A stretch of 63,580 nt of DNA, counting the filler, from Octopus bimaculoides (taxonomy: Eukaryota): assembly GCF_001194135.2 (NCBI RefSeq). It is 4 parts of 4 records of this genome, joined end to end, with 100 filler letters (N's around TTAATTAATTAA, not from the genome) between each part and the next. Parts side by side here need not be neighbours in the genome. Positions count along the whole stretch, not along the records: positions 55,102 to 63,580 come from NC_068987.1; 3 more parts are not named here. One strand, given 5' to 3'. The notes beneath the pieces were generated by a model. The model worked only from the letters and a program-made list of their open reading frames with translations, did no database searches and was not told the DNA's origin. Position numbers and translations under genes: made by a program. This document shows positions 55,102 to 63,580 of the stretch, piece by piece (the first letter of the stretch is position 1; every line of letters begins with the position of its first letter).

Positions 55102-55360
55102 TTTTGCCGAACCACTAAGTTACGGGGACCTAAACGCACCAGCATCGGTTGTCAAGCGTGGTTGGGGGGGGGGACAAACACAGCACACACATATATATAT
55201 ACGACGGGCTTCTTTCAGTTTCCGTCTACCAAATCCACTCACAAGGCTTTGGTCGGCCCAAGGCTATAGTAGAAGACACTCGCTCAAGGTGCCACGCTGT
55301 GGGACTGAACCCGGAACTATGTGTTTGGTAAGCAAGCTACTTACCACACAGTCACTCCTG
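55102..55360 (-). mobile_element. SINE family A (tail cut by the linker)
   Basis: Homologous to 22668-23059. Confidence 0.85.
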
Positions 55361-55364
55361 GACC

Positions 55365-55399
<35 letters not shown>

Positions 55400-55434
55400 C
55401 AATAATAATAATGATGATGATGATGATGATGATG

Positions 55435-55790
55435 TCATTTATTTGCCACGAGGGCGAAGGATGAGGAGGACATACAAATACGGACATGAAGTGTTGGGGT
55501 TTACATATAATAATGAAATGATAATAAAAAGGAAAAAAGGAAGTAAGTACAGAAGGGACATATGTGTAGCATACAAATGTAGGAAAAACTGGTGGGGAGA
55601 ATGATAGAAGTGCGGCCCTCCTGATACAGGAAGGCTTCTAGGAATAATCGAGGAACCCCACTGTCCGAGATTTCCCTGAATCCCCAGGAGCAAGTGCCCA
55701 CTCCAATTCCTTCTTTCCGACTCACTGGCCTACACTCAGAGAGGTCCCCTCCACGCTCGCCATTTTGTCAACTTTCACCCACTTCTTTTA
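55435..55790 (-). mobile_element. L1/Tx1-like LINE 3' end
   Basis: KKWVKVDKMASVEGTSLSVGQ*, then a 3' UTR ending aaataaatga followed by a (CAT)n(TAT)n tail. Confidence 0.55.
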
Positions 55791-57577
55791 TTTGCCGCTA
55801 GGGCCAGGGCGGGGGGGGATTAGTAATAATAATAGCCGTAACGACAATGATATAAGTACTAACGACAACAACAAAAACAATGATAATTCTTTCTACGATA
55901 GGCACAAGGCCAACAATTTAGGCGATTTCACCNNNNNNNNNNNNNNNNNNNNNNNNNNNNNNNNNNNNNNNNNNNNNNNNNNNNNNNNNNNNNNNNNNNN
56001 NNNNNNNNNNNNNNNNNNNNNNNNNNNNNNNNNNNNNNNNNNNNNNNNNNNNNNNNNNNNNNNNNNNNNNNNNNNNNNNNNNNNNNNNNNNNNNNNNNNN
56101 NNNNNNNNNNNNNNNNNNNNNNNNNNNNNNNNNNNNNNNNNNNNNNNNNNNNNNNNNNNNNNNNNNNNNNNNNNNNNNNNNNNNNNNNNNNNNNNNNNNN
56201 NNNNNNNNNNNNNNNNNNNNNNNNNNNNNNNNNNNNNNNNNNNNNNNNNNNNNNNNNNNNNNNNNNNNNNNNNNNNNNNNNNNNNNNNNNNNNNNNNNNN
56301 NNNNNNNNNNNNNNNNNNNNNNNNNNNNNNNNNNNNNNNNNNNNNNNNNNNNNNNNNNNNNNNNNNNNNNNNNNNNNNNNNNNNNNNNNNNNNNNNNNNN
56401 NNNNNNNNNNNNNNNNNNNNNNNNNNNNNNNNNNNNNNNNNNNNNNNNNNNNNNNNNNNNNNNNNNNNNNNNNNNNNNNNNNNNNNNNNNNNNNNNNNNN
56501 NNNNNNNNNNNNNNNNNNNNNNNNNNNNNNNNNNNNNNNNNNNNNNNNNNNNNNNNNNNNNNNNNNNNNNNNNNNNNNNNNNNNNNNNNNNNNNNNNNNN
56601 NNNNNNNNNNNNNNNNNNNNNNNNNNNNNNNNNNNNNNNNNNNNNNNNNNNNNNNNNNNNNNNNNNNNNNNNNNNNNNNNNNNNNNNNNNNNNNNNNNNN
56701 NNNNNNNNNNNNNNNNNNNNNNNNNNNNNNNNNNNNNNNNNNNNNNNNNNNNNNNNNNNNNNNNNNNNNNNNNNNNNNNNNNNNNNNNNNNNNNNNNNNN
56801 NNNNNNNNNNNNNNNNNNNNNNNNNNNNNNNNNNNNNNNNNNNNNNNNNNNNNNNNNNNNNNNNNNNNNNNNNNNNNNNNNNNNNNNNNNNNNNNTATGT
56901 GTGTATATATATGTAAATATGTATGTGTGTGTGGACGTTGAAACTATTCAGCTTAGTCAACACGTTGCCATATTTATTACAATGAAATTGTAGTGGGCGA
57001 AAAAAACAGAAAAATAAAGCGTTCAGTTCGAATATTACTTCACTGATCGCAGTCCACGCCGTTAAAATGGAATATTTCCGTAGTTGATGTTTATTTTATC
57101 CCTTTTCTCCTTCCTCTACAACCATTTTATTCTTCTTCTCCTTCTTCTTCCTTTTATTTCCGCGTATTTTTGCTTCGTTTTTGTTTTCACAGATATTTTC
57201 AATTGCTGCAGAATTCACATCATCATTAACATCAATGCGTTCGACAATATCAGCGCACGCGTCAATGGCGGCGATAAATCGTTGTTGTTGTTCTAGCGTC
57301 GGCTTCACAAGCAACAATATGCCAATGTTTAATGATTGCAGGTTGAAACAACATGAATGACCAGTAGCCTTTTGTTGATTTCAATAGCCTTTCGTTGGTG
57401 AATTAAATTTGTCCACATATGTTCTATTTATTGTTTACATCTGATGCTGTACAATTCGCAATATGCTTACATACAATACACATACATATATATATACGTT
57501 TACGTTTATAGACATGCATAAACACACAAACACAAACACACATACACATACATACGTATATATATATNNNNNNNNNN

Positions 57578-57611
<34 letters not shown>

Positions 57612-58751
57612 TATGTTTGTATGAATGGATGTATATATATAAGTACAGATTATTTAATATACATCTCTGATCTCTATCTAACCCTCTATTTATACATCTT
57701 ACGAATGTGTGTATGCGTCTATGTATACATAGGTATGTATGGGTATGTATACACATACACGCAAAAATGTACACTCACACACACACACACACACATATTA
57801 AATTTTAAAAGAAACATCTTCAATGTTTCAGCTTGCTCGCCTTCGTTAGACAGAGTCTACCACACTTTCCAAAAACAGAAGAATGCGTAGAGTGTGGTAG
57901 AAATATAAGCAAGTGTATGGGTGCAAGATTCTGTTGGCAGGGAAATGAGAGACGAAGAGAAAAATGGAGGTCATCAATTCGAGGGGTAATGCCCAGGTGT
58001 CGAAACCATAATGATAACTGTTTGGCAGCTGATGATAGATGTATACGTTTGATCTGCATGTTGATTGTTAATCTTTTGTATCACATCTTCTAGTGTTTCC
58101 AAGTTGTCCGGATCTTATATATATATATATATATATATATAGTTTTAGGGAAAATAACCAATTTTCAAGAACTCATCGATGAAAATCCACTATCACATAT
58201 AGAAAAATTAATAATTAAAAGCACAATAAATGAGTATAATATAAAGTAAAGTAAATATCATAAGATAAATATAATATAATATTATATTATATTATATTAT
58301 ATTATATTATATTTATCTTATGATATTTACTTTNNNNNNNNNNNNNNNNNNNNNNNNNNNNNNNNNNNNNNNNNNNNNNNNNNNNNNNNNNNNNNNNNNN
58401 NNNNNNNNNNNNNNNNNNNNNNNNNNNNNNNNNNNNNNNNNNNNNNNNNNNNNNNNNNNNNNNNNNNNNNNNNNNNNNNNNNNNNNNNNNNNNNNNNNNN
58501 NNNNNNNNNNNNNNNNNNNNNNNNNNNNNNNNNNNNNNNNNNNNNNNNNNNNNNNNNNNNNNNNNNNNNNNNNNNNNNNNNNNNNNNNNNNNNNNNNNNN
58601 NNNNNNNNNNNNNNNNNNNNNNNNNNNNNNNNNNNNNNNNNNNNNNNNNNNNNNNNNNNNNNNNNNNNNNNNNNNNNNNNNNNNNNNNNNNNNNNNNNNN
58701 NNNNNNNNNNNNNNNNNNNNNNNNNNNNNNNNNNNNNNNNNNNNNNNNNNN

Positions 58752-58783
<32 letters not shown>

Positions 58784-58904
58784 AGTTATGAGCGGTAGTG
58801 GTGTCAATGAGACCTAAAGGTGTCAGGTAATGATGAGTAAGTGCTATGGATAGACTATAGTTAAGCTCAAGGCTCGGTGATTATGCGAATAAGAGGTCCA
58901 ACGT

Positions 58905-59185
58905 AGGTATTGGAATCTTAAAATCATAAGGTATTGGAATCTCATATGTATACCATTCTGCCTAAATAATGGATCTACAAATACAATATCTCTGCATATC
59001 TCACATCTATTTTCGTTCCTCCACCTCACTCTCTATTTAGCATCTTATCTAAACTAACTATTGCTTAACCATCTTCTCACACAGTCTCTGATGAAGGGAT
59101 ATAATAAATATCCTGGAAACAGCTTTTAGACCTATTTATAAATATTCTAAAATCTACACACCCTTGGTCTTTTATCTCATTACGA
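58905..59185 (+). mobile_element. Penelope pseudo-LTR-like repeat (third copy of the 24350-25237 family)
   Basis: Aligns with the reverse complement of 24350-24560 and with 25075-25237. Confidence 0.8.
59084..59131 (+). ncRNA. Minimal type I hammerhead-like motif
   Basis: GTCT-CTGATGA-A-GGGATAT-aataa-ATATCCT-G-GAAA-CAGCTTTT-AGAC. Stem I GTCT/AGAC and stem II pair. Stem III and the cleavage site are mutated (GUA in the 24400 copy). Confidence 0.6.
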
Positions 59186-59194
59186 AAAGTAATT

Positions 59195-59298
<104 letters not shown>

Positions 59299-59437
59299 CA
59301 TATACATAAATATGTATATATGCGTATTTATTCTGAGTGCGCGTACATATATATGTACACATACAAACACATGCACACACATACACGCGCGCACACATAC
59401 ACACACACACACACATACATCTATACATATGTAAGGG

Positions 59438-59513
59438 AAACTGTGTGAACAGGCTCGCGTTGGCTGTACAGATCAGAAGGGCTGTATGAACGAATCAACG
59501 TCGGGGGTCACCA
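59438..59513 (+). pseudogene. Degenerate near full-length tRNA-Trp retro-copy including CCA, fused to an LTR end
   Basis: cgcgt..cagatcagaagggctgtatgaacgaatcaacgtcgggggtcaCCA aligns with metazoan tRNA-Trp (..GCGCGTCTGACTCCAGATCAGAAGG(C/T)TGCGTGTTC(G/A)AATCACGTCGGGGTCA+CCA, recalled consensus). The anticodon and TPsiC are altered. Confidence 0.7.
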
Positions 59514-59804
59514 ATTGTAAGGTACGACCGACGTCGGGGTCACCAATTGTAAGGGACGACCGTGCGAACTCAAAAAGGAGATATGGTGACGAATGGAAAA
59601 ACAGAGGACTCCTTTTATTTAAACGAGTCACACGGTCGAACATACAAATATATATATCAATGGATGATATACATAATATGTTATACGACGATAACATAGA
59701 TGACCAGCAATGAAAGACCACAACCGTATAAGATGAATAACAGAGATATTTATTATGGCGTTAAAGATGTATGTCTGTGTGAGAGTGTGAATGCGACATA
59801 TAAG
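59498..59804 (-). mobile_element. LTR U5 end + tRNA-Trp primer-binding site, junction tandemly duplicated
   Basis: Minus strand AATAAA (59619-59614), then 66 nt to ..CCCTTACA (59548), then AT, then TGGTGACCCCGACGT (15-nt PBS). The 32/33-bp junction unit is repeated at 59498-59530 and 59531-59562. Confidence 0.75.
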
Positions 59805-60469
59805 NNNNNNNNNNNNNNNNNNNNNNNNNNNNNNNNNNNNNNNNNNNNNNNNNNNNNNNNNNNNNNNNNNNNNNNNNNNNNNNNNNNNNNNNNNNNNNNN
59901 NNNNNNNNNNNNNNNNNNNNNNNNNNNNNNNNNNNNNNNNNNNNNNNNNNNNNNNNNNNNNNNNNNNNNNNNNNNNNNNNNNNNNNNNNNNNNNNNNNNN
60001 NNNNNNNNNNNNNNNNNNNNNNNNNNNNNNNNNNNNNNNNNNNNNNNNNNNNNNNNNNNNNNNNNNNNNNNNNNNNNNNNNNNNNNNNNNNNNNNNNNNN
60101 NNNNNNNNNNNNNNNNNNNNNNNNNNNNNNNNNNNNNNNNNNNNNNNNNNNNNNNNNNNNNNNNNNNNNNNNNNNNNNNNNNNNNNNNNNNNNNNNNNNN
60201 NNNNNNNNNNNNNNNNNNNNNNNNNNNNNNNNNNNNNNNNNNNNNNNNNNNNNNNNNNNNNNNNNNNNNNNNNNNNNNNNNNNNNNNNNNNNNNNNNNNN
60301 NNNNNNNNNNNNNNNNNNNNNNNNNNNNNNNNNNNNNNNNNNNNNNNNNNNNNNNNNNNNNNNNNNNNNNNNNNNNNNNNNNNNNNNNNNNNNNNNNNNN
60401 NNNNNNNGTACACGGAACAGTTCTCAAAGAGAAACTGGACCGAGACGAATTTGGCTGCCGAGTTGAAGC

Positions 60470-60710
60470 TATTTATAACAAACTATTGGCTCACCAGATG
60501 GTAGAAATATACTCTATCACGTGACCTTATTAGGGGCCGTGATTGGTCAGTTTGCGTTCTGGCGGGAACGGTTCGAAGAAGTTGCCGATTCGAATAATGA
60601 TCAGTCACGTGATGGACAAGGAATGGGTTCTCTACTACGCTCGCATTTATTTATATTTAAATGAGAAGATTGTATGTAATGGCGATAGTAGTTTGTATCT
60701 AATGGCGGGA
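60470..60710 (-). promoter_or_regulatory. Dense Pol II promoter-motif cluster (possible LTR U3 or host promoter)
   Basis: TATAAATA (minus, 60477-60470), CCAAT x2 (60485, 60542), TCACGTGA x2 (60517, 60605), GGCGGGAA E2F-type (60561), AATGGCG x2 (60678, 60701), in a CpG-rich unique segment. Confidence 0.55.
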
Positions 60711-61067
60711 GGTAGTTTCACTACACATATATATATATATATATATAAACATACGTATAACTTGACATAAAACAAACATTAATATATGTGTATAGGTGGA
60801 GGTGTAACAAAATAAGAATGACAAATCGTTCGTAAAATATTTTGCTAACCGAATATGAAGCAGACGATCTCTTTTATTTTGTATTATTTTAATGTATACT
60901 CTGTAACTTACCTAACTGCAGACAGCATCCAAATATTATATGACTTGTAATTTGAGTTTCAAAACGCACTCTAGATATATAAATGTACACGTGTTGTGTG
61001 CATTTGAATGTAGCGTGCGTGCGTGTGTTTGTTTGTAAGGGTGTGTGAGTACGTGTGTGTGTGTGTT

Positions 61068-61117
<50 letters not shown>

Positions 61118-61359
61118 TATTTACAAAAATCCTTACATTCAACAATAAAAAATTTCATTCACGTTTTTATGGCAATATCTGGAGCAGGAAGAAAGACAAT
61201 TGGCTTCGATTAACAAACAGCCTTGTTCTTAGTTTTTGCATTTTTTCATTCGTATACACTGCCAATAAATCGAATAGAATAGAACTGAATTGAATCGCAA
61301 TGAGGTAGGTGGTGTTAAATTAAACTTAGTTGTTGTACACTATAATTGAACTTCTTCAG

Positions 61360-62440
61360 CAACATGCGAGGGTTGTCCCGAAATTAACAGTGAACCTAAG
61401 TTCTTTTTCAACTGATCTCAGTCGTTCAAATTGCACGTGTTGATAGAATAAGTGTTTCTATCTACAAATACACTATTCAACATAGTCTCTATCTCAACTA
61501 ATGTACAGTAGGTGGGTGGGCGGGGAAACCACTGACAAAACCAATTCGCTGGTTGCCTGATTTGTTGCCAAATATATTTTGTGGCCGTGCGTTCTTATGG
61601 TGAATGGAGGTCATTTTCAGATTCTTCTTCTGTGTCTTCTCCCCCTTGTGATCTCTCTAAGCGTCTTGAGTTTCTCAGTTTATCATTCGCTATTCATGGT
61701 GCAGCCACTTTTCAGAACAGAGAGAATGGCACCTTTACCATCGTGAAAAACAAGTCACTTTTGGTGTCCATCATTTTATGACTTGGAGAAAAGGAGGTGA
61801 CACCATTCCATGGTCTGAGTATTTGTTTCCGGATCATTAATATACGGCCACGTGTTTTTCATTGGTTTCCTTCAAACTCTTCCTGAAGATCAAAGCAGAC
61901 TTCCAAATTTCTCTCATGCAAATCGATTGTCAACTGCCTAGATATCCACTTTGCACACATTTTCCCATACTCCAAACCTTCCACCAACATGCGAGGCCTG
62001 CCCCGAAACTTACAGTGAACTTAAGCTTCTTTTTTAACTGATCTCAGTTGTTCAAGTTGCTCATCTTGGTAGAATATGTCTTTCTCTCCACAAAGAAACT
62101 ATTCAACATATGTACAAAGGGCTCACGAAGTGTGATTACTCTGTTCACGCGAATCAAATCATCCCCCTGCCGGTGATTCGTGTTATTAGTCGTCCTTGAT
62201 TGCCTCAAACTGCGTGGTTTGTTTCCAGGGCTGGCATTCTCTTCCTTAAACTTCATCCATTTTGCACATTACCCATCCCAAAAGTGACATTTCCCTTAAC
62301 AACCTGTTGACGTCTGTGGATGTCGGACAGCCTACACCCCAAGTTTTCCTGCAAACTTCCATTTATGAAAAATCTCACTTGCTTAGTGAATATTTCTCTC
62401 AGTAATTTATTGTAGTTGTAATATATCTGTAATTTAAACA
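61360..62440 (-). mobile_element. Fragmented mariner remnants with a duplicated ~75-bp terminal-like block
   Basis: KFKEENASPGNKPRSLRQSRTT..DDLIRVNRVITLRE (mariner HTH) and GKMCAKWISRQLT; caacatgcgagg..cccgaaa..cagtgaac repeated near 61360 and 61985. Confidence 0.65.
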
Positions 62441-62877
62441 AACTTGAAGGTTTAGCATGCTAGAAATAGCATCGATTACATAGTTATTAGTGTAAGACTT
62501 ACAGCGTTCCAAACAGTCATACCAACAAAATCACTTCTTAATTTATTTTTTTTTCAACAGTAATACCAGTATATCAAAAAATTTTCATTTTATCAAAAAT
62601 AAGCCTGGAAGTTATACAGCTATTCTGTCTAATAGCATTCATTCATTCAATAAATAATTTCTTTACATTACGTGTATAGAATAAACTGTGGGTTTTGCAA
62701 ATAGTATATTTACACTTGAAATGAAAACATTGAAATGAATGTATATTAAATTATCAATAATGAAAATAGAGGCAAGAGAGAGTGAGGGACTGTTGCAAAT
62801 GAAAACGGAAAATTTCACCTGCAACGAATTAATATTGTTTATTAAAACTACTCTCCAGTGAATGCAACAAATTTTTT

Positions 62878-63050
62878 AATTTGTGAAAAACTTGTAGTTC
62901 AAATATGCAATAACCTTCAAAGATCGAAATTACAGGAAATTTCTTGGAACGTGAATTCATTAAAAAAATTTCCAGAAGGTCAAGCCTTTAATGATTCCTT
63001 TCTTTTAGTTATTGTTACATATTTAATCAATTAGCAGCTTTCTCTATTAT
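62878..63050 (+). repeat. Unclassified interspersed repeat (copy of 1518-1700)
   Basis: See 1518-1700. Confidence 0.7.
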
Positions 63051-63134
63051 AAGATAGGATACTATCATTATTATTACTACTGATATCATTGATATCATTA
63101 TTATTATTAGGCCGTGTGCCTATAGTAGAAACTA

Positions 63135-63176
<42 letters not shown>

Positions 63177-63186
63177 AATTATTATT

Positions 63187-63250
<64 letters not shown>
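63135..63250. repeat. (ATT)n(AAT)n inverted microsatellite
   Basis: An (ATT) tract is followed by its complementary (AAT) tract. Confidence 0.9.
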
Positions 63251-63580
63251 TCATTATAGACGGTAATCTTGCAATTATTCATATATCTGTGAAATTTGCT
63301 ACACACAGTCACAGTGGCACATATACGCATACATACGCACAGAGATTTACACGATTATACACTTTGATTATCATATACTGAAAGATGGGGAATATATACA
63401 TACATACATACATATATATACACACACACCTGAAAGAAAAGATAAGAAAATGGAGATAAGGAAGTTAATAAATGTTTATTCTTAACAAATTGGTCTTCTT
63501 CGCTTCTTACAGTATTTCCTTGGATGCAGCCATCCCTTCACGAGGTTACCATATCCTCTTATTAAATATATGAATATATA

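What the first reader, a model, noticed from the sequence alone, without database searches (positions are those of the whole stretch)
59430..59804. LTR end whose primer-binding site extends into a near full-length, CCA-bearing tRNA-Trp copy, with a duplicated LTR-PBS junction
Seen (minus strand): AATAAA, then ..CGGTCGTCCCTTACA-AT-TGGTGACCCCGACGT, then CGGTCGTACCTTACA-AT-TGGTGACCCCCGACGT, then TGATTCGTTCATACAGCCCTTCTGATCTGTACAGCCAACGCGAGCCTGTTCACACAG, then TTTCCCTTACA. The last block stays complementary to tRNA-Trp (recalled consensus) through the T arm, variable loop, anticodon arm and into the D arm, for about 75 nt, and is closed by a third CCCTTACA. Established: eukaryotic tRNA genes lack CCA, so this came from mature tRNA, and reverse transcriptase normally copies only ~18 nt of primer before stopping at m1A58. 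Inference: either read-through copying of the whole primer with repeated strand-transfer slippage, or a non-autonomous LTR/TRIM family that stably carries a whole tRNA-like module (extended primer annealing, self-supplied primer or Pol III promoter). There is no internal ORF between the PBS and the third LTR-like end. I am not aware of this being described in cephalopods, but could not search.
Basis: partly seen in the sequence, partly recalled or inferred. Interest (0 to 1): 0.8.

Follow-up and report, generated by a model that had tools for sequence, protein, structure and literature searches.

The report
LTR relic with copied tRNA primer
A dead fragment of a retrovirus-like mobile element carries, right after its primer-binding site, a decayed copy of about 40 more bases of the tryptophan tRNA that primed its replication; it is a fossil of reverse transcriptase overrunning its normal stop, a curiosity and not a working device.

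Summary
The quoted sequence is there. On the minus strand an LTR-like end (...CCCTTACA) is followed by AT and a perfect 15-nt tRNA-Trp primer-binding site (PBS) that includes CCA. This junction is repeated 32 nt further on. After the second PBS, the complementarity to tRNA-Trp continues in register through the T arm, variable loop and anticodon arm to about position 22. That stretch matches 31 of 40 positions, and no shuffle out of 5000 scored as well.

It is not near full length. Positions 1-21 of the tRNA are undetectable (p about 0.5). The last 21 nt are instead a third, diverged copy of the LTR terminus (18/22).

The stretch does not fold as a tRNA. It has no A box and a broken B box. There is no ORF, no polypurine tract and no second LTR. 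A self-supplied primer, a Pol III promoter or a TRIM are therefore not supported.

Best reading: the footprint of plus-strand strong-stop synthesis that ran past m1A58 into the primer tRNA, preserved in a dead LTR-element relic.

I could not test whether this happened once at this locus or is inherited by a whole family, because no cephalopod DNA was reachable. The PBS and LTR ends look younger than the tRNA stretch, and this is unexplained. The 32-nt duplication may be an assembly artefact.

The parts
59570..59804 (-). Body of the LTR-like sequence, cut off by the assembly gap at 59805-60407. It holds a TATA-like run at 59657..59648 and AATAAA at 59619..59614, about 65 nt before the LTR terminus.
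   Evidence: Sequence read directly. No second copy elsewhere in the piece (blastn).
59548..59569 (-). 3' terminus of the LTR (U5 end), GTTCGCACGGTCGTCCCTTACA, ending in CA.
   Evidence: CCCTTACA occurs 3 times against 0.15 expected.
59546..59547 (-). Two-base spacer AT between the LTR end and the PBS. This is the dinucleotide an integrase would trim from a linear DNA end.
   Evidence: The role is inferred from general retroelement biology.
59531..59545 (-). PBS copy 1, TGGTGACCCCGACGT. It is an exact complement of tRNA-Trp positions 62-76, including CCA.
   Evidence: unique, 0.01 expected. tRNA-Trp 3' end from papers.
59516..59530 (-). Second copy of the last 15 nt of the LTR, CGGTCGTACCTTACA (14/15 identical to the first copy).
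   Evidence: the repeat finder family D6.
59514..59515 (-). Second AT spacer.
59498..59513 (-). PBS copy 2, TGGTGACCCCCGACGT (15/15 plus one extra C).
59456..59497 (-). Diverged complement of tRNA-Trp positions 61 down to about 22 (T arm, variable loop, anticodon arm, 3' strand of the D stem). It is contiguous and in register with PBS copy 2. It has 31/40 matches, 8 mismatches and 3 indels. The 11-nt core CTTCTGATCTG is exact.
   Evidence: Reference sequence checked.
59451..59455 (-). Five unassigned bases (AGCCT) at the junction between the tRNA-derived stretch and the third LTR end.
59430..59450 (-). Third, diverged copy of the LTR terminus, GTTCACACAGTTTCCCTTACA (18/22 against the first copy). 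All differences fall on the three CpGs of the first copy. The non-repetitive element ends here.
59194..59429 (.). Flank made of TA, TG/CA and imperfect microsatellites. This is not part of the element.
   Evidence: The Rfam 'miRNA' hits here are low-complexity noise far below gathering scores.

Best explanation
This is a non-functional relic of an LTR retrotransposon on the minus strand. It looks Ty3/gypsy-like and uses tRNA-Trp as primer.

Its LTR ends in ...CCCTTACA and is followed by the 2-nt spacer AT and the PBS. Where a leader and gag-pol should follow, there are about 42 nt that are a decayed complement of tRNA-Trp positions 61 to about 22. Then come the last 21 nt of an LTR again, and then flanking microsatellite.

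The tRNA-derived stretch is the footprint of plus-strand strong-stop DNA synthesis. That synthesis normally copies only the 18 primer nucleotides up to m1A58. Here it ran on through the T arm and anticodon arm and stopped in the region of position 22-26.

The terminal 21-nt LTR end arose in one of two ways. Either a template switch back to the U5 end produced a dead-end DNA that was integrated or captured. Or a later deletion removed the interior of an old element up to the last 21 nt of its 3' LTR.

What is shown:
- the layout of the locus;
- the tRNA-Trp identity of the PBS;
- the significance and extent of the extension;
- the absence of tRNA structure.

What is inferred:
- the read-through mechanism;
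- the cause of the stop;
- the origin of the third LTR end.

Whether the read-through happened at the birth of this copy or earlier in its family is open, at roughly even odds.
For: - The LTR-end/AT/PBS architecture has an exact 15-nt tRNA-Trp complement including CCA, present twice. The tRNA-Trp sequence comes from papers.
- The collinear, in-register extension is significant: 0-6 of 5000 shuffles for the whole and 0 of 5000 for each of two sub-regions.
- CCA is not encoded in eukaryotic tRNA genes (established knowledge), so the template was mature tRNA.
- m1A58 is the normal plus-strand stop and m5Um54 a second one. Read-through yields DNA that cannot complete transfer (PMC8599865).
- Ty1 LTR cDNA intermediates that carry cDNA-only nucleotides are captured at chromosome breaks (PMC11372161).
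- Invertebrate Gypsy elements with a tRNA-Trp PBS are on record (Gypsy-32_NVi; PMC10886601).
- There is a third LTR terminus at the far end.
- There is no tRNA fold, no ORF and no second LTR.
Against: - Only one copy is available.
- The LTR's 5' end, the target-site duplication and the interior are unseen because of the gap at 59805-60407.
- The extension has 11 changes in 40 positions, while the two PBS copies have 1 in 30 (Fisher p = 0.009). The third LTR end has lost all three CpGs that the first copy keeps. A single event followed by uniform decay does not predict this age difference.
- The mismatches do not sit specifically on positions known to be modified.
- The reference tRNA is mammalian, not the species' own.
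- The 32-nt duplication has no microhomology at its borders. Its two differences (C/A, G4/G5) look allelic, so it may be an assembly or gap-closing artefact.
Confidence: 0.6

Rival explanations
1. A functional, family-level module. In this reading a cephalopod LTR/TRIM lineage stably carries a tRNA-Trp-derived block after the PBS. The block would be used for extended primer annealing, as a self-supplied primer, or as a Pol III promoter.
For: - The PBS and LTR ends look conserved while the extension has drifted. This is what is expected if the PBS is renewed or selected in each replication cycle and the rest is merely inherited.
- The contig breaks inside the LTR at a non-microsatellite position, as happens in multi-copy repeats.
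- TRIMs with tRNA-like parts exist (Helenus; PMC10886601).
Against: - There is no cloverleaf: ARAGORN finds 0 tRNAs, Rfam tRNA gives no hit at E<=10 even on 96 nt, and the MFE is no better than shuffles (z = 0.3).
- The tRNA's 5' third, which holds the A box, is absent, and the B box is mutated to GAACGAATC.
- The tRNA-like strand is antisense to the LTR transcript.
- There is no second LTR and no polypurine tract or ORF.
- In Helenus the tRNA-like part lies inside the LTR and is not complementary to the PBS.
- 23% divergence argues against selection on extended pairing.
Confidence: 0.12
2. A retroposon on the plus strand derived from minus-strand strong-stop DNA still joined to its primer. 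The order would be tRNA, CCA, AT, then the complement of U5-R. This is the intermediate proposed for CCA-bearing tRNA-derived SINEs of squid and octopus.
For: - Read on the plus strand, the order is exactly tRNA(22-76)-CCA-AT-TGTAAGG... (U5 complement), seen twice.
- The model was proposed from a squid SINE (Ohshima et al. 1993). The citation is confirmed. The content is recalled, because the paper was not held.
Against: - The linear sequence is identical to that of a plus-strand read-through, so the order alone does not discriminate between the two.
- The A-box third of the tRNA is absent, the B box is broken, and there is no recognisable SINE tail.
- The sequence continues at least 185 nt beyond the presumed R into U3-like sequence up to the gap.
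- A third U5 end sits 5' of the tRNA part, which this model does not predict.
Confidence: 0.07
3. The whole locus is an artefact or chance. Either the draft assembly joined unrelated reads, or the tRNA similarity is coincidental leader sequence.
For: - The piece is a gap-rich draft with four N runs.
- The 32-nt duplication has two allelic-looking differences and no microhomology at its borders.
- An extra CCCTTACA at 61034 shows that short matches to the LTR end do turn up elsewhere in the piece.
Against: - The extension is contiguous with the PBS inside one 1053-bp contig (58752-59804).
- The similarity is significant in two independent sub-regions and has the correct register and orientation.
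- Assemblers collapse repeats more readily than they create them.
- An artefact is plausible for the 32-nt duplication alone (my estimate is about 0.25-0.3), but not for the extension.
Confidence: 0.05
4. An LTR element happened to integrate next to a genomic tRNA-Trp gene or pseudogene, as tRNA-targeting elements do.
For: Some LTR retrotransposons do target Pol III genes (general knowledge; title of PMC5911963).
Against: - The tRNA-like stretch carries CCA, which is not gene-encoded in eukaryotes.
- It is joined to the LTR by exactly the PBS geometry (CA-AT-TGG), and this junction occurs twice.
- There is no T-run terminator, no 5' third of the tRNA, and no tRNA call.
Confidence: 0.02

Closest known systems
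Plus-strand strong-stop DNA read-through past m1A58 of the primer tRNA (studied for HIV-1 and tRNA-Lys3; PMC8599865)
   Same: DNA synthesis continues from U5 through the PBS into the body of the primer tRNA. This gives LTR-PBS followed by the complement of the T arm and beyond. The product cannot complete normal strand transfer.
   Different: The known cases are laboratory observations in cells that lack the modification. Here a product of that kind, or its descendant, is fixed in an animal germline. It extends to about position 22, is 23% diverged, and is closed by another LTR terminus.
Cloned circular retroviral DNA with tRNA sequence between the LTRs (Colicelli and Goff 1986, J Virol; recalled, not checked here)
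   Same: A copy of primer tRNA longer than the PBS sits next to a U5 end and is followed by LTR sequence.
   Different: There the tRNA lies between U5 and the start of U3 at a circle junction in unintegrated DNA. Here it is followed by a U5 end in the same orientation, and the whole is chromosomal.
Capture of Ty1 cDNA replication intermediates at chromosome breaks (PMC11372161 and the work it cites)
   Same: An LTR plus nucleotides that exist only in cDNA is inserted without the rest of the element. The present locus sits among microsatellites, which are break-prone.
   Different: The yeast inserts were not reported (in the passages I read) to carry long tRNA copies. An integrase-made end here (the element stops at CA) is equally possible.
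Helenus / TRIMp3 non-autonomous LTR retrotransposons (Kojima 2024, PMC10886601)
   Same: These are LTR-type elements that contain a tRNA-derived sequence. They occur in molluscs (bivalves) and are mobilised by Gypsy elements, some of which use a tRNA-Trp PBS.
   Different: In Helenus the tRNA-like part lies inside both LTRs, keeps the A and B boxes, and is not complementary to the PBS. Here it lies outside the LTR, continues the PBS, is antisense, has no boxes, and there is no LTR pair or polypurine tract.
Strong-stop-DNA model for the origin of CCA-bearing tRNA-derived SINEs (Ohshima, Koishi, Matsuo, Okada 1993 PNAS; citation seen, content recalled)
   Same: On the plus strand the locus reads tRNA-CCA followed directly by the complement of a U5. 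This is the postulated intermediate, and it occurs in a cephalopod-like genome.
   Different: There is no Pol III promoter, no evidence of amplification, and it uses tRNA-Trp rather than tRNA-Lys. It is a possible raw material for such a SINE, not a SINE itself.
PBSs complementary to internal tRNA regions (copia-type, Ty5, fungal Helenus/Copia)
   Same: Complementarity between an element and the anticodon region of a tRNA.
   Different: Those PBSs abut the LTR and pair with the 3' end of a tRNA half. Here the anticodon-arm complement is 30-40 nt away from the LTR and is simply part of a continuous tRNA copy.

Membership tests
LTR retrotransposon (5' LTR / PBS junction) | [quoted passage not shown] | tested here: met
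   ...CCCTTACA, then AT, then TGGTGACCCCGACGT, which is 15/15 complementary to tRNA-Trp 62-76. The junction is present twice.
LTR retrotransposon (5' LTR / PBS junction) | Two LTR copies with TG...CA termini, flanked by a target-site duplication | tested here: inconclusive
   No second LTR copy in the piece. The 5' end of the LTR is lost in the gap at 59805-60407. Only a 21-nt LTR terminus lies downstream. A TGTAAGG...CCCTTACA pair at 61137..61034 is unexplained.
LTR retrotransposon (5' LTR / PBS junction) | A polypurine tract before the 3' LTR, and gag/pol reading frames or their remains | tested here: not met
   No purine run in 59430-59497. No retroelement ORF in the piece. This fits a truncated or dead-end copy, not an intact element.
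LTR retrotransposon (5' LTR / PBS junction) | Multi-copy family in the host genome | not testable with these tools
   No cephalopod DNA collection is available. Scans of viral and metagenome contigs found nothing. The ORF-based search found nothing, but the control with a hyper-abundant SINE found only one protein, so that null is uninformative.
Primer-tRNA read-through product of plus-strand strong-stop synthesis | Complement of the primer tRNA continues beyond position 58, contiguous and in register with the PBS, directly downstream of U5 | tested here: met
   Positions 61 to about 22 match at 31/40, with 0 of 5000 shuffles reaching the score in two sub-regions.
Primer-tRNA read-through product of plus-strand strong-stop synthesis | The copy derives from mature tRNA (CCA present; mismatches at modified positions) | tested here: inconclusive
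   CCA is present. The mismatches (positions 30, 34, 50, 51, 54, 55 and indels) do not map specifically to positions recalled as modified. The species' own tRNA-Trp is unavailable.
   Positions 1-21 are not detectable. That space is occupied by a third LTR terminus.
Helenus / TRIMp3 (tRNA-bearing TRIM) | A tRNA-like sequence with conserved A and B boxes inside both LTRs, with the PBS and polypurine tract between two short LTRs | tested here: not met
   The tRNA-like part lies outside the LTR and continues the PBS. The A-box region is absent. The B box reads GAACGAATC. There is no LTR pair and no polypurine tract. Definition taken from PMC10886601.
tRNA-derived SINE | A 5' tRNA-related head with a Pol III A and B box, a body, and a LINE-related or simple-repeat tail, in many copies | tested here: not met
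   No head 5' third, a broken B box, and no tRNA-model or ARAGORN hit. Copy number is not testable.
Functional tRNA gene or tRNA-like structure | Cloverleaf fold recognised by tRNA models | tested here: not met
   ARAGORN finds 0. Rfam gives no tRNA hit at E<=10 on 505 nt or on 96 nt. MFE is -19.3 against -20.1 +/- 2.8 kcal/mol for shuffles.

The most novel reading that the evidence does not exclude
The extension is not private to this locus. Instead it is the inherited leader of a cephalopod LTR-retrotransposon lineage in which a roughly 55-nt copy of the primer tRNA-Trp, plus a repeated U5-end/PBS junction, became fixed after an ancestral read-through.

Such a lineage would show that primer read-through products can be heritable. 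It would also provide, in the very animal group where the idea was born, the tRNA-CCA-U5 intermediate postulated for the origin of CCA-bearing tRNA-derived SINEs.
Probability: 0.25. Interest if true: 0.65.

Novelty: new variant of a known kind. Interest (0 to 1): 0.35.

Why it matters
Reverse transcriptases of retroviruses and LTR elements are thought to stop 18 nt into the primer tRNA, at m1A58. Overruns are known from manipulated cells and from cloned unintegrated DNA. They are regarded as dead ends.

A germline-fixed LTR/PBS junction that runs about 40 nt further into tRNA-Trp shows that such products can reach the chromosome. If it is shared by a family, it shows that they can be propagated.

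It also has the exact tRNA-CCA-U5 order invoked three decades ago for the origin of some tRNA-derived SINEs.

As it stands, it is one decayed copy in a draft assembly: a well-documented curiosity, not a new system. In practice it is a reminder that CCA-bearing tRNA-like fragments next to ...CA/TGG junctions should be annotated as retroelement footprints, not as tRNA pseudogenes.

Tried and rejected
1. tRNA detection. ARAGORN and Rfam at lax thresholds on 505 nt and on 96 nt found no tRNA. The Rfam 'miRNA' hits are microsatellite noise.
2. RNA folding of 59435-59513 gave no excess stability, so a structured tRNA-like module is rejected.
3. A full-length tRNA copy is rejected: positions 1-21 are not detectable.
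4. Searching for other copies led nowhere.
   - A search of the 5.8-billion-protein collection with the 82-aa spurious ORF spanning LTR-PBS-tRNA found 0 hits.
   - An exact look-up of the 75-aa plus-strand ORF was not on record.
   - A positive control with an ORF across the abundant SINE at 55149-55331 gave a single hit. These nulls therefore say nothing about copy number. I left the third protein search unused.
5. A second LTR in the piece: blastn found only trivial matches.
6. Pfam on short ORFs of 61300-62450 and 57096-57317 found nothing.
7. The Ohshima et al. 1993 paper could not be read. Only its citation was confirmed.
8. Integration beside a tRNA gene is rejected because of the CCA and the duplicated junction.
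9. Microhomology at the two internal junctions was inspected by eye. None is convincing, except a possible GTT shared by the D-arm complement and U5.

Full report
**What is there**

The piece (55102-63580) is a gap-rich draft scaffold full of microsatellites. The finding lies in one 1053-bp contig, 58752-59804.

Read on the minus strand from 59804 downwards, the order is:
- an LTR-like sequence with a TATA-like run (59657..59648) and AATAAA (59619..59614), ending in GTTCGCACGGTCGTCCCTTACA at 59548;
- the dinucleotide AT;
- TGGTGACCCCGACGT (59545..59531);
- a second CGGTCGTACCTTACA (59530..59516);
- AT again;
- TGGTGACCCCCGACGT (59513..59498);
- 42 nt, TGATTCGTTCATACAGCCCTTCTGATCTGTACAGCCAACGCG (59497..59456);
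- AGCCT;
- GTTCACACAGTTTCCCTTACA (59450..59430);
- TG/TA microsatellite.

**The primer-binding site**

The 15-mer is unique in the window, with 0.01 matches expected even when two mismatches are allowed. It is the exact complement of the 3' end of tRNA-Trp with its CCA. This end is printed for mouse 3' tRNA fragments (ATCACGTCGGGGTCACCA), for a mosquito small RNA and for a full human tRNA-Trp template.

The geometry CA, two bases, TGG is the usual LTR/PBS junction. Invertebrate Gypsy elements primed by tRNA-Trp are on record. The junction is duplicated: 27 nt at 96% identity, period 32.

**How far the tRNA copy goes**

My recalled tRNA-Trp sequence differs from the printed human sequence only at the two engineered positions.

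With the last 15 nt removed, tRNA-Trp still aligns to 59441-59497 with a local score of 15-19. Shuffles gave 7.4-7.7 +/- 1.5, and 6 and 0 of 5000 reached the observed score. No other place in the piece scores as high.

Split by region:
- Positions 22-48 and 44-61 are each significant (0 of 5000). They include an exact CAGATCAGAAGG.
- Positions 1-21 are not significant.

So the copy covers about positions 22-76. The part beyond the PBS has 31 matches, 8 mismatches and 3 indels over 40 reference positions. 'Near full-length' is therefore not confirmed. 'Well beyond the m1A58 stop, through the T arm, variable loop and anticodon arm' is confirmed.

**The far end**

The similarity upstream of the shared octamer has p about 0.01-0.017 against shuffles and against all genomic anchors in the piece. 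CCCTTACA itself is over-represented, with 3 occurrences against 0.15 expected.

The element therefore ends, at CA, in a third U5-type terminus.

**What it is not**

- It is not a tRNA. ARAGORN finds none. The Rfam tRNA model gives no hit at E<=10 even when only 96 nt are searched. The fold is no more stable than shuffles (z = 0.3).
- It has no Pol III promoter. The A-box third is missing, and the B box reads GAACGAATC.
- It is not a TRIM of the Helenus type. Those carry the tRNA-like part inside both LTRs, keep both boxes, and show no complementarity between that part and the PBS. Here there is no LTR pair, no polypurine tract and no ORF.
- It is not an insertion beside a tRNA gene. The CCA and the doubled junction exclude that.

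**Most likely mechanism**

After minus-strand synthesis, the plus strand starts at the polypurine tract and copies U3-R-U5. It then copies the primer still attached to the minus strand, and normally halts at m1A58. m5Um54 is a back-up stop, and overruns give DNA that cannot finish strand transfer (PMC8599865).

The order LTR, AT, complement of tRNA 76 to about 22 is what such an overrun produces. The end near position 22-26 is where heavily modified purines of eukaryotic tRNAs lie; this is recalled knowledge and an inference.

The third LTR terminus can be explained in two ways:
- **(a)** A template switch from the blocked tRNA template back to a minus-strand DNA near its U5 end, with run-off there. 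This would create an end that an integrase can use, or a fragment that break repair can capture. Capture is seen for Ty1 LTR intermediates that carry cDNA-only nucleotides (PMC11372161).
- **(b)** An ordinary later deletion that removed everything from the leader to the last 21 nt of the 3' LTR of an old full-length element.

Under (a) the read-through is private to this locus. Under (b) the tRNA-derived leader belonged to the parent element and probably to a family.

**An unexplained heterogeneity**

- The two PBS copies show 1 change in 30 positions, while the extension shows 11 in 40 (Fisher p = 0.009).
- The third LTR end differs from the first only at the first copy's three CpGs (two CG to CA, one lost). 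The first and second LTR ends and both PBS copies keep all of theirs.
- The block 59498-59569 therefore looks younger than 59430-59497.

Possible reasons, none testable here:
- The PBS and LTR are renewed or selected at every replication cycle while an inherited leader drifts. This favours the family reading.
- Copying of a modified tRNA was error-prone, and the switch went to a decayed co-packaged template. This favours a one-off.
- Gene conversion from normal family members stopped where homology ends.

**The 32-nt duplication**

It has no microhomology at its borders. Its two differences (C/A, and a G-run length) look like allelic variants. I give about 0.25-0.3 to an assembly or gap-closing artefact. 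Otherwise it is replication or RT slippage. Removing it would simplify the locus to LTR, AT, PBS, tRNA extension, U5 end.

**Family question**

This is the decisive test, and I could not run it. No cephalopod DNA is searchable with these tools.
- Exact scans of viral and metagenome contigs found nothing.
- The trick of searching spurious ORFs in the large protein collection found nothing.
- The same trick applied to the piece's highly repeated SINE found one protein only. The collection barely samples such genomes, so the null carries no weight.

**Comparison with known things**

The closest matches are:
- read-through of the primer tRNA in plus-strand strong-stop synthesis;
- the cloned circular retroviral DNA with tRNA between the LTRs (recalled);
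- capture of LTR cDNA intermediates at breaks.

On the plus strand the locus also has the order tRNA-CCA-U5 complement. This is the order postulated by Ohshima and colleagues for the birth of CCA-bearing tRNA-derived SINEs from a squid example (citation; content recalled). However, it lacks every feature of a working SINE.

**Verdict**

This is a real and unusual but non-functional footprint of reverse transcription overrunning into tRNA-Trp, preserved in an LTR-element relic. It is a new variant of a known process and is of modest interest unless a family is found.

Noticed in passing
window 61034-61137 (minus strand): A third exact CCCTTACA (61041..61034) lies 96 nt downstream, in minus sense, of a TGTAAGG (61137..61131). 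Together they have the form of the inverted LTR termini TGTAAGG...CCCTTACA and enclose only AT-rich sequence and a (CA)n run. This may be chance or a gutted solo LTR of the same family. No further similarity to 59548-59804 was found.
   Followed up: partly
window 60408-60640 (minus strand): A Pol II promoter-like cluster abuts the gap. It holds two CCAAT boxes (complements of ATTGG at about 60486 and 60543), two CACGTG palindromes (about 60520 and 60607) and TTATAAATAG (about 60469-60478). It could be the U3 of the same LTR if the LTR spans the gap, or an unrelated host or TE promoter.
   Followed up: no
window 55102-55365: A tRNA-derived SINE-like repeat on the minus strand, with a B-box-like GGTTCAGTCCC, followed by (AAT)n/(GAT)n. 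From memory it resembles the abundant octopus SINE. An ORF across it gave the only hit in the protein collection (P0001, 77% identity over half the query).
   Followed up: partly
window 61357-61484 and 61982-62110: Two copies of a module of about 130 bp, 81-85% identical and 626 bp apart, in a region with short broken ORFs on the minus strand. One of these, GKMCAKWISRQLTIDLHERNLEVC, recalls mariner-type transposase N-termini. Pfam found nothing for the short ORFs.
   Followed up: partly
window 58255-58334: A near-perfect AT-rich palindrome with arms of about 34 nt (AAAGTAAATATCATAAGATAAATATAATATAATA and its reverse complement). It ends exactly at the assembly gap, so it may be a hairpin-forming site or an assembly fold-back artefact.
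   Followed up: no
window 59435-59441 (plus strand): GGGAAAC, a heptamer of the retroviral frameshift 'slippery' type, gave a 12-bit sub-threshold Rfam hit (RF01097, E = 4.4). There is no ORF here, so I consider it noise.
   Followed up: yes
window 59463-59469 and 59483-59489 (plus strand): GGCTGTA occurs twice, 20 nt apart, inside the tRNA-derived stretch. The upstream copy replaces the 5' strand of the anticodon stem. This hints at a small internal slippage or re-copying event during synthesis.
   Followed up: no
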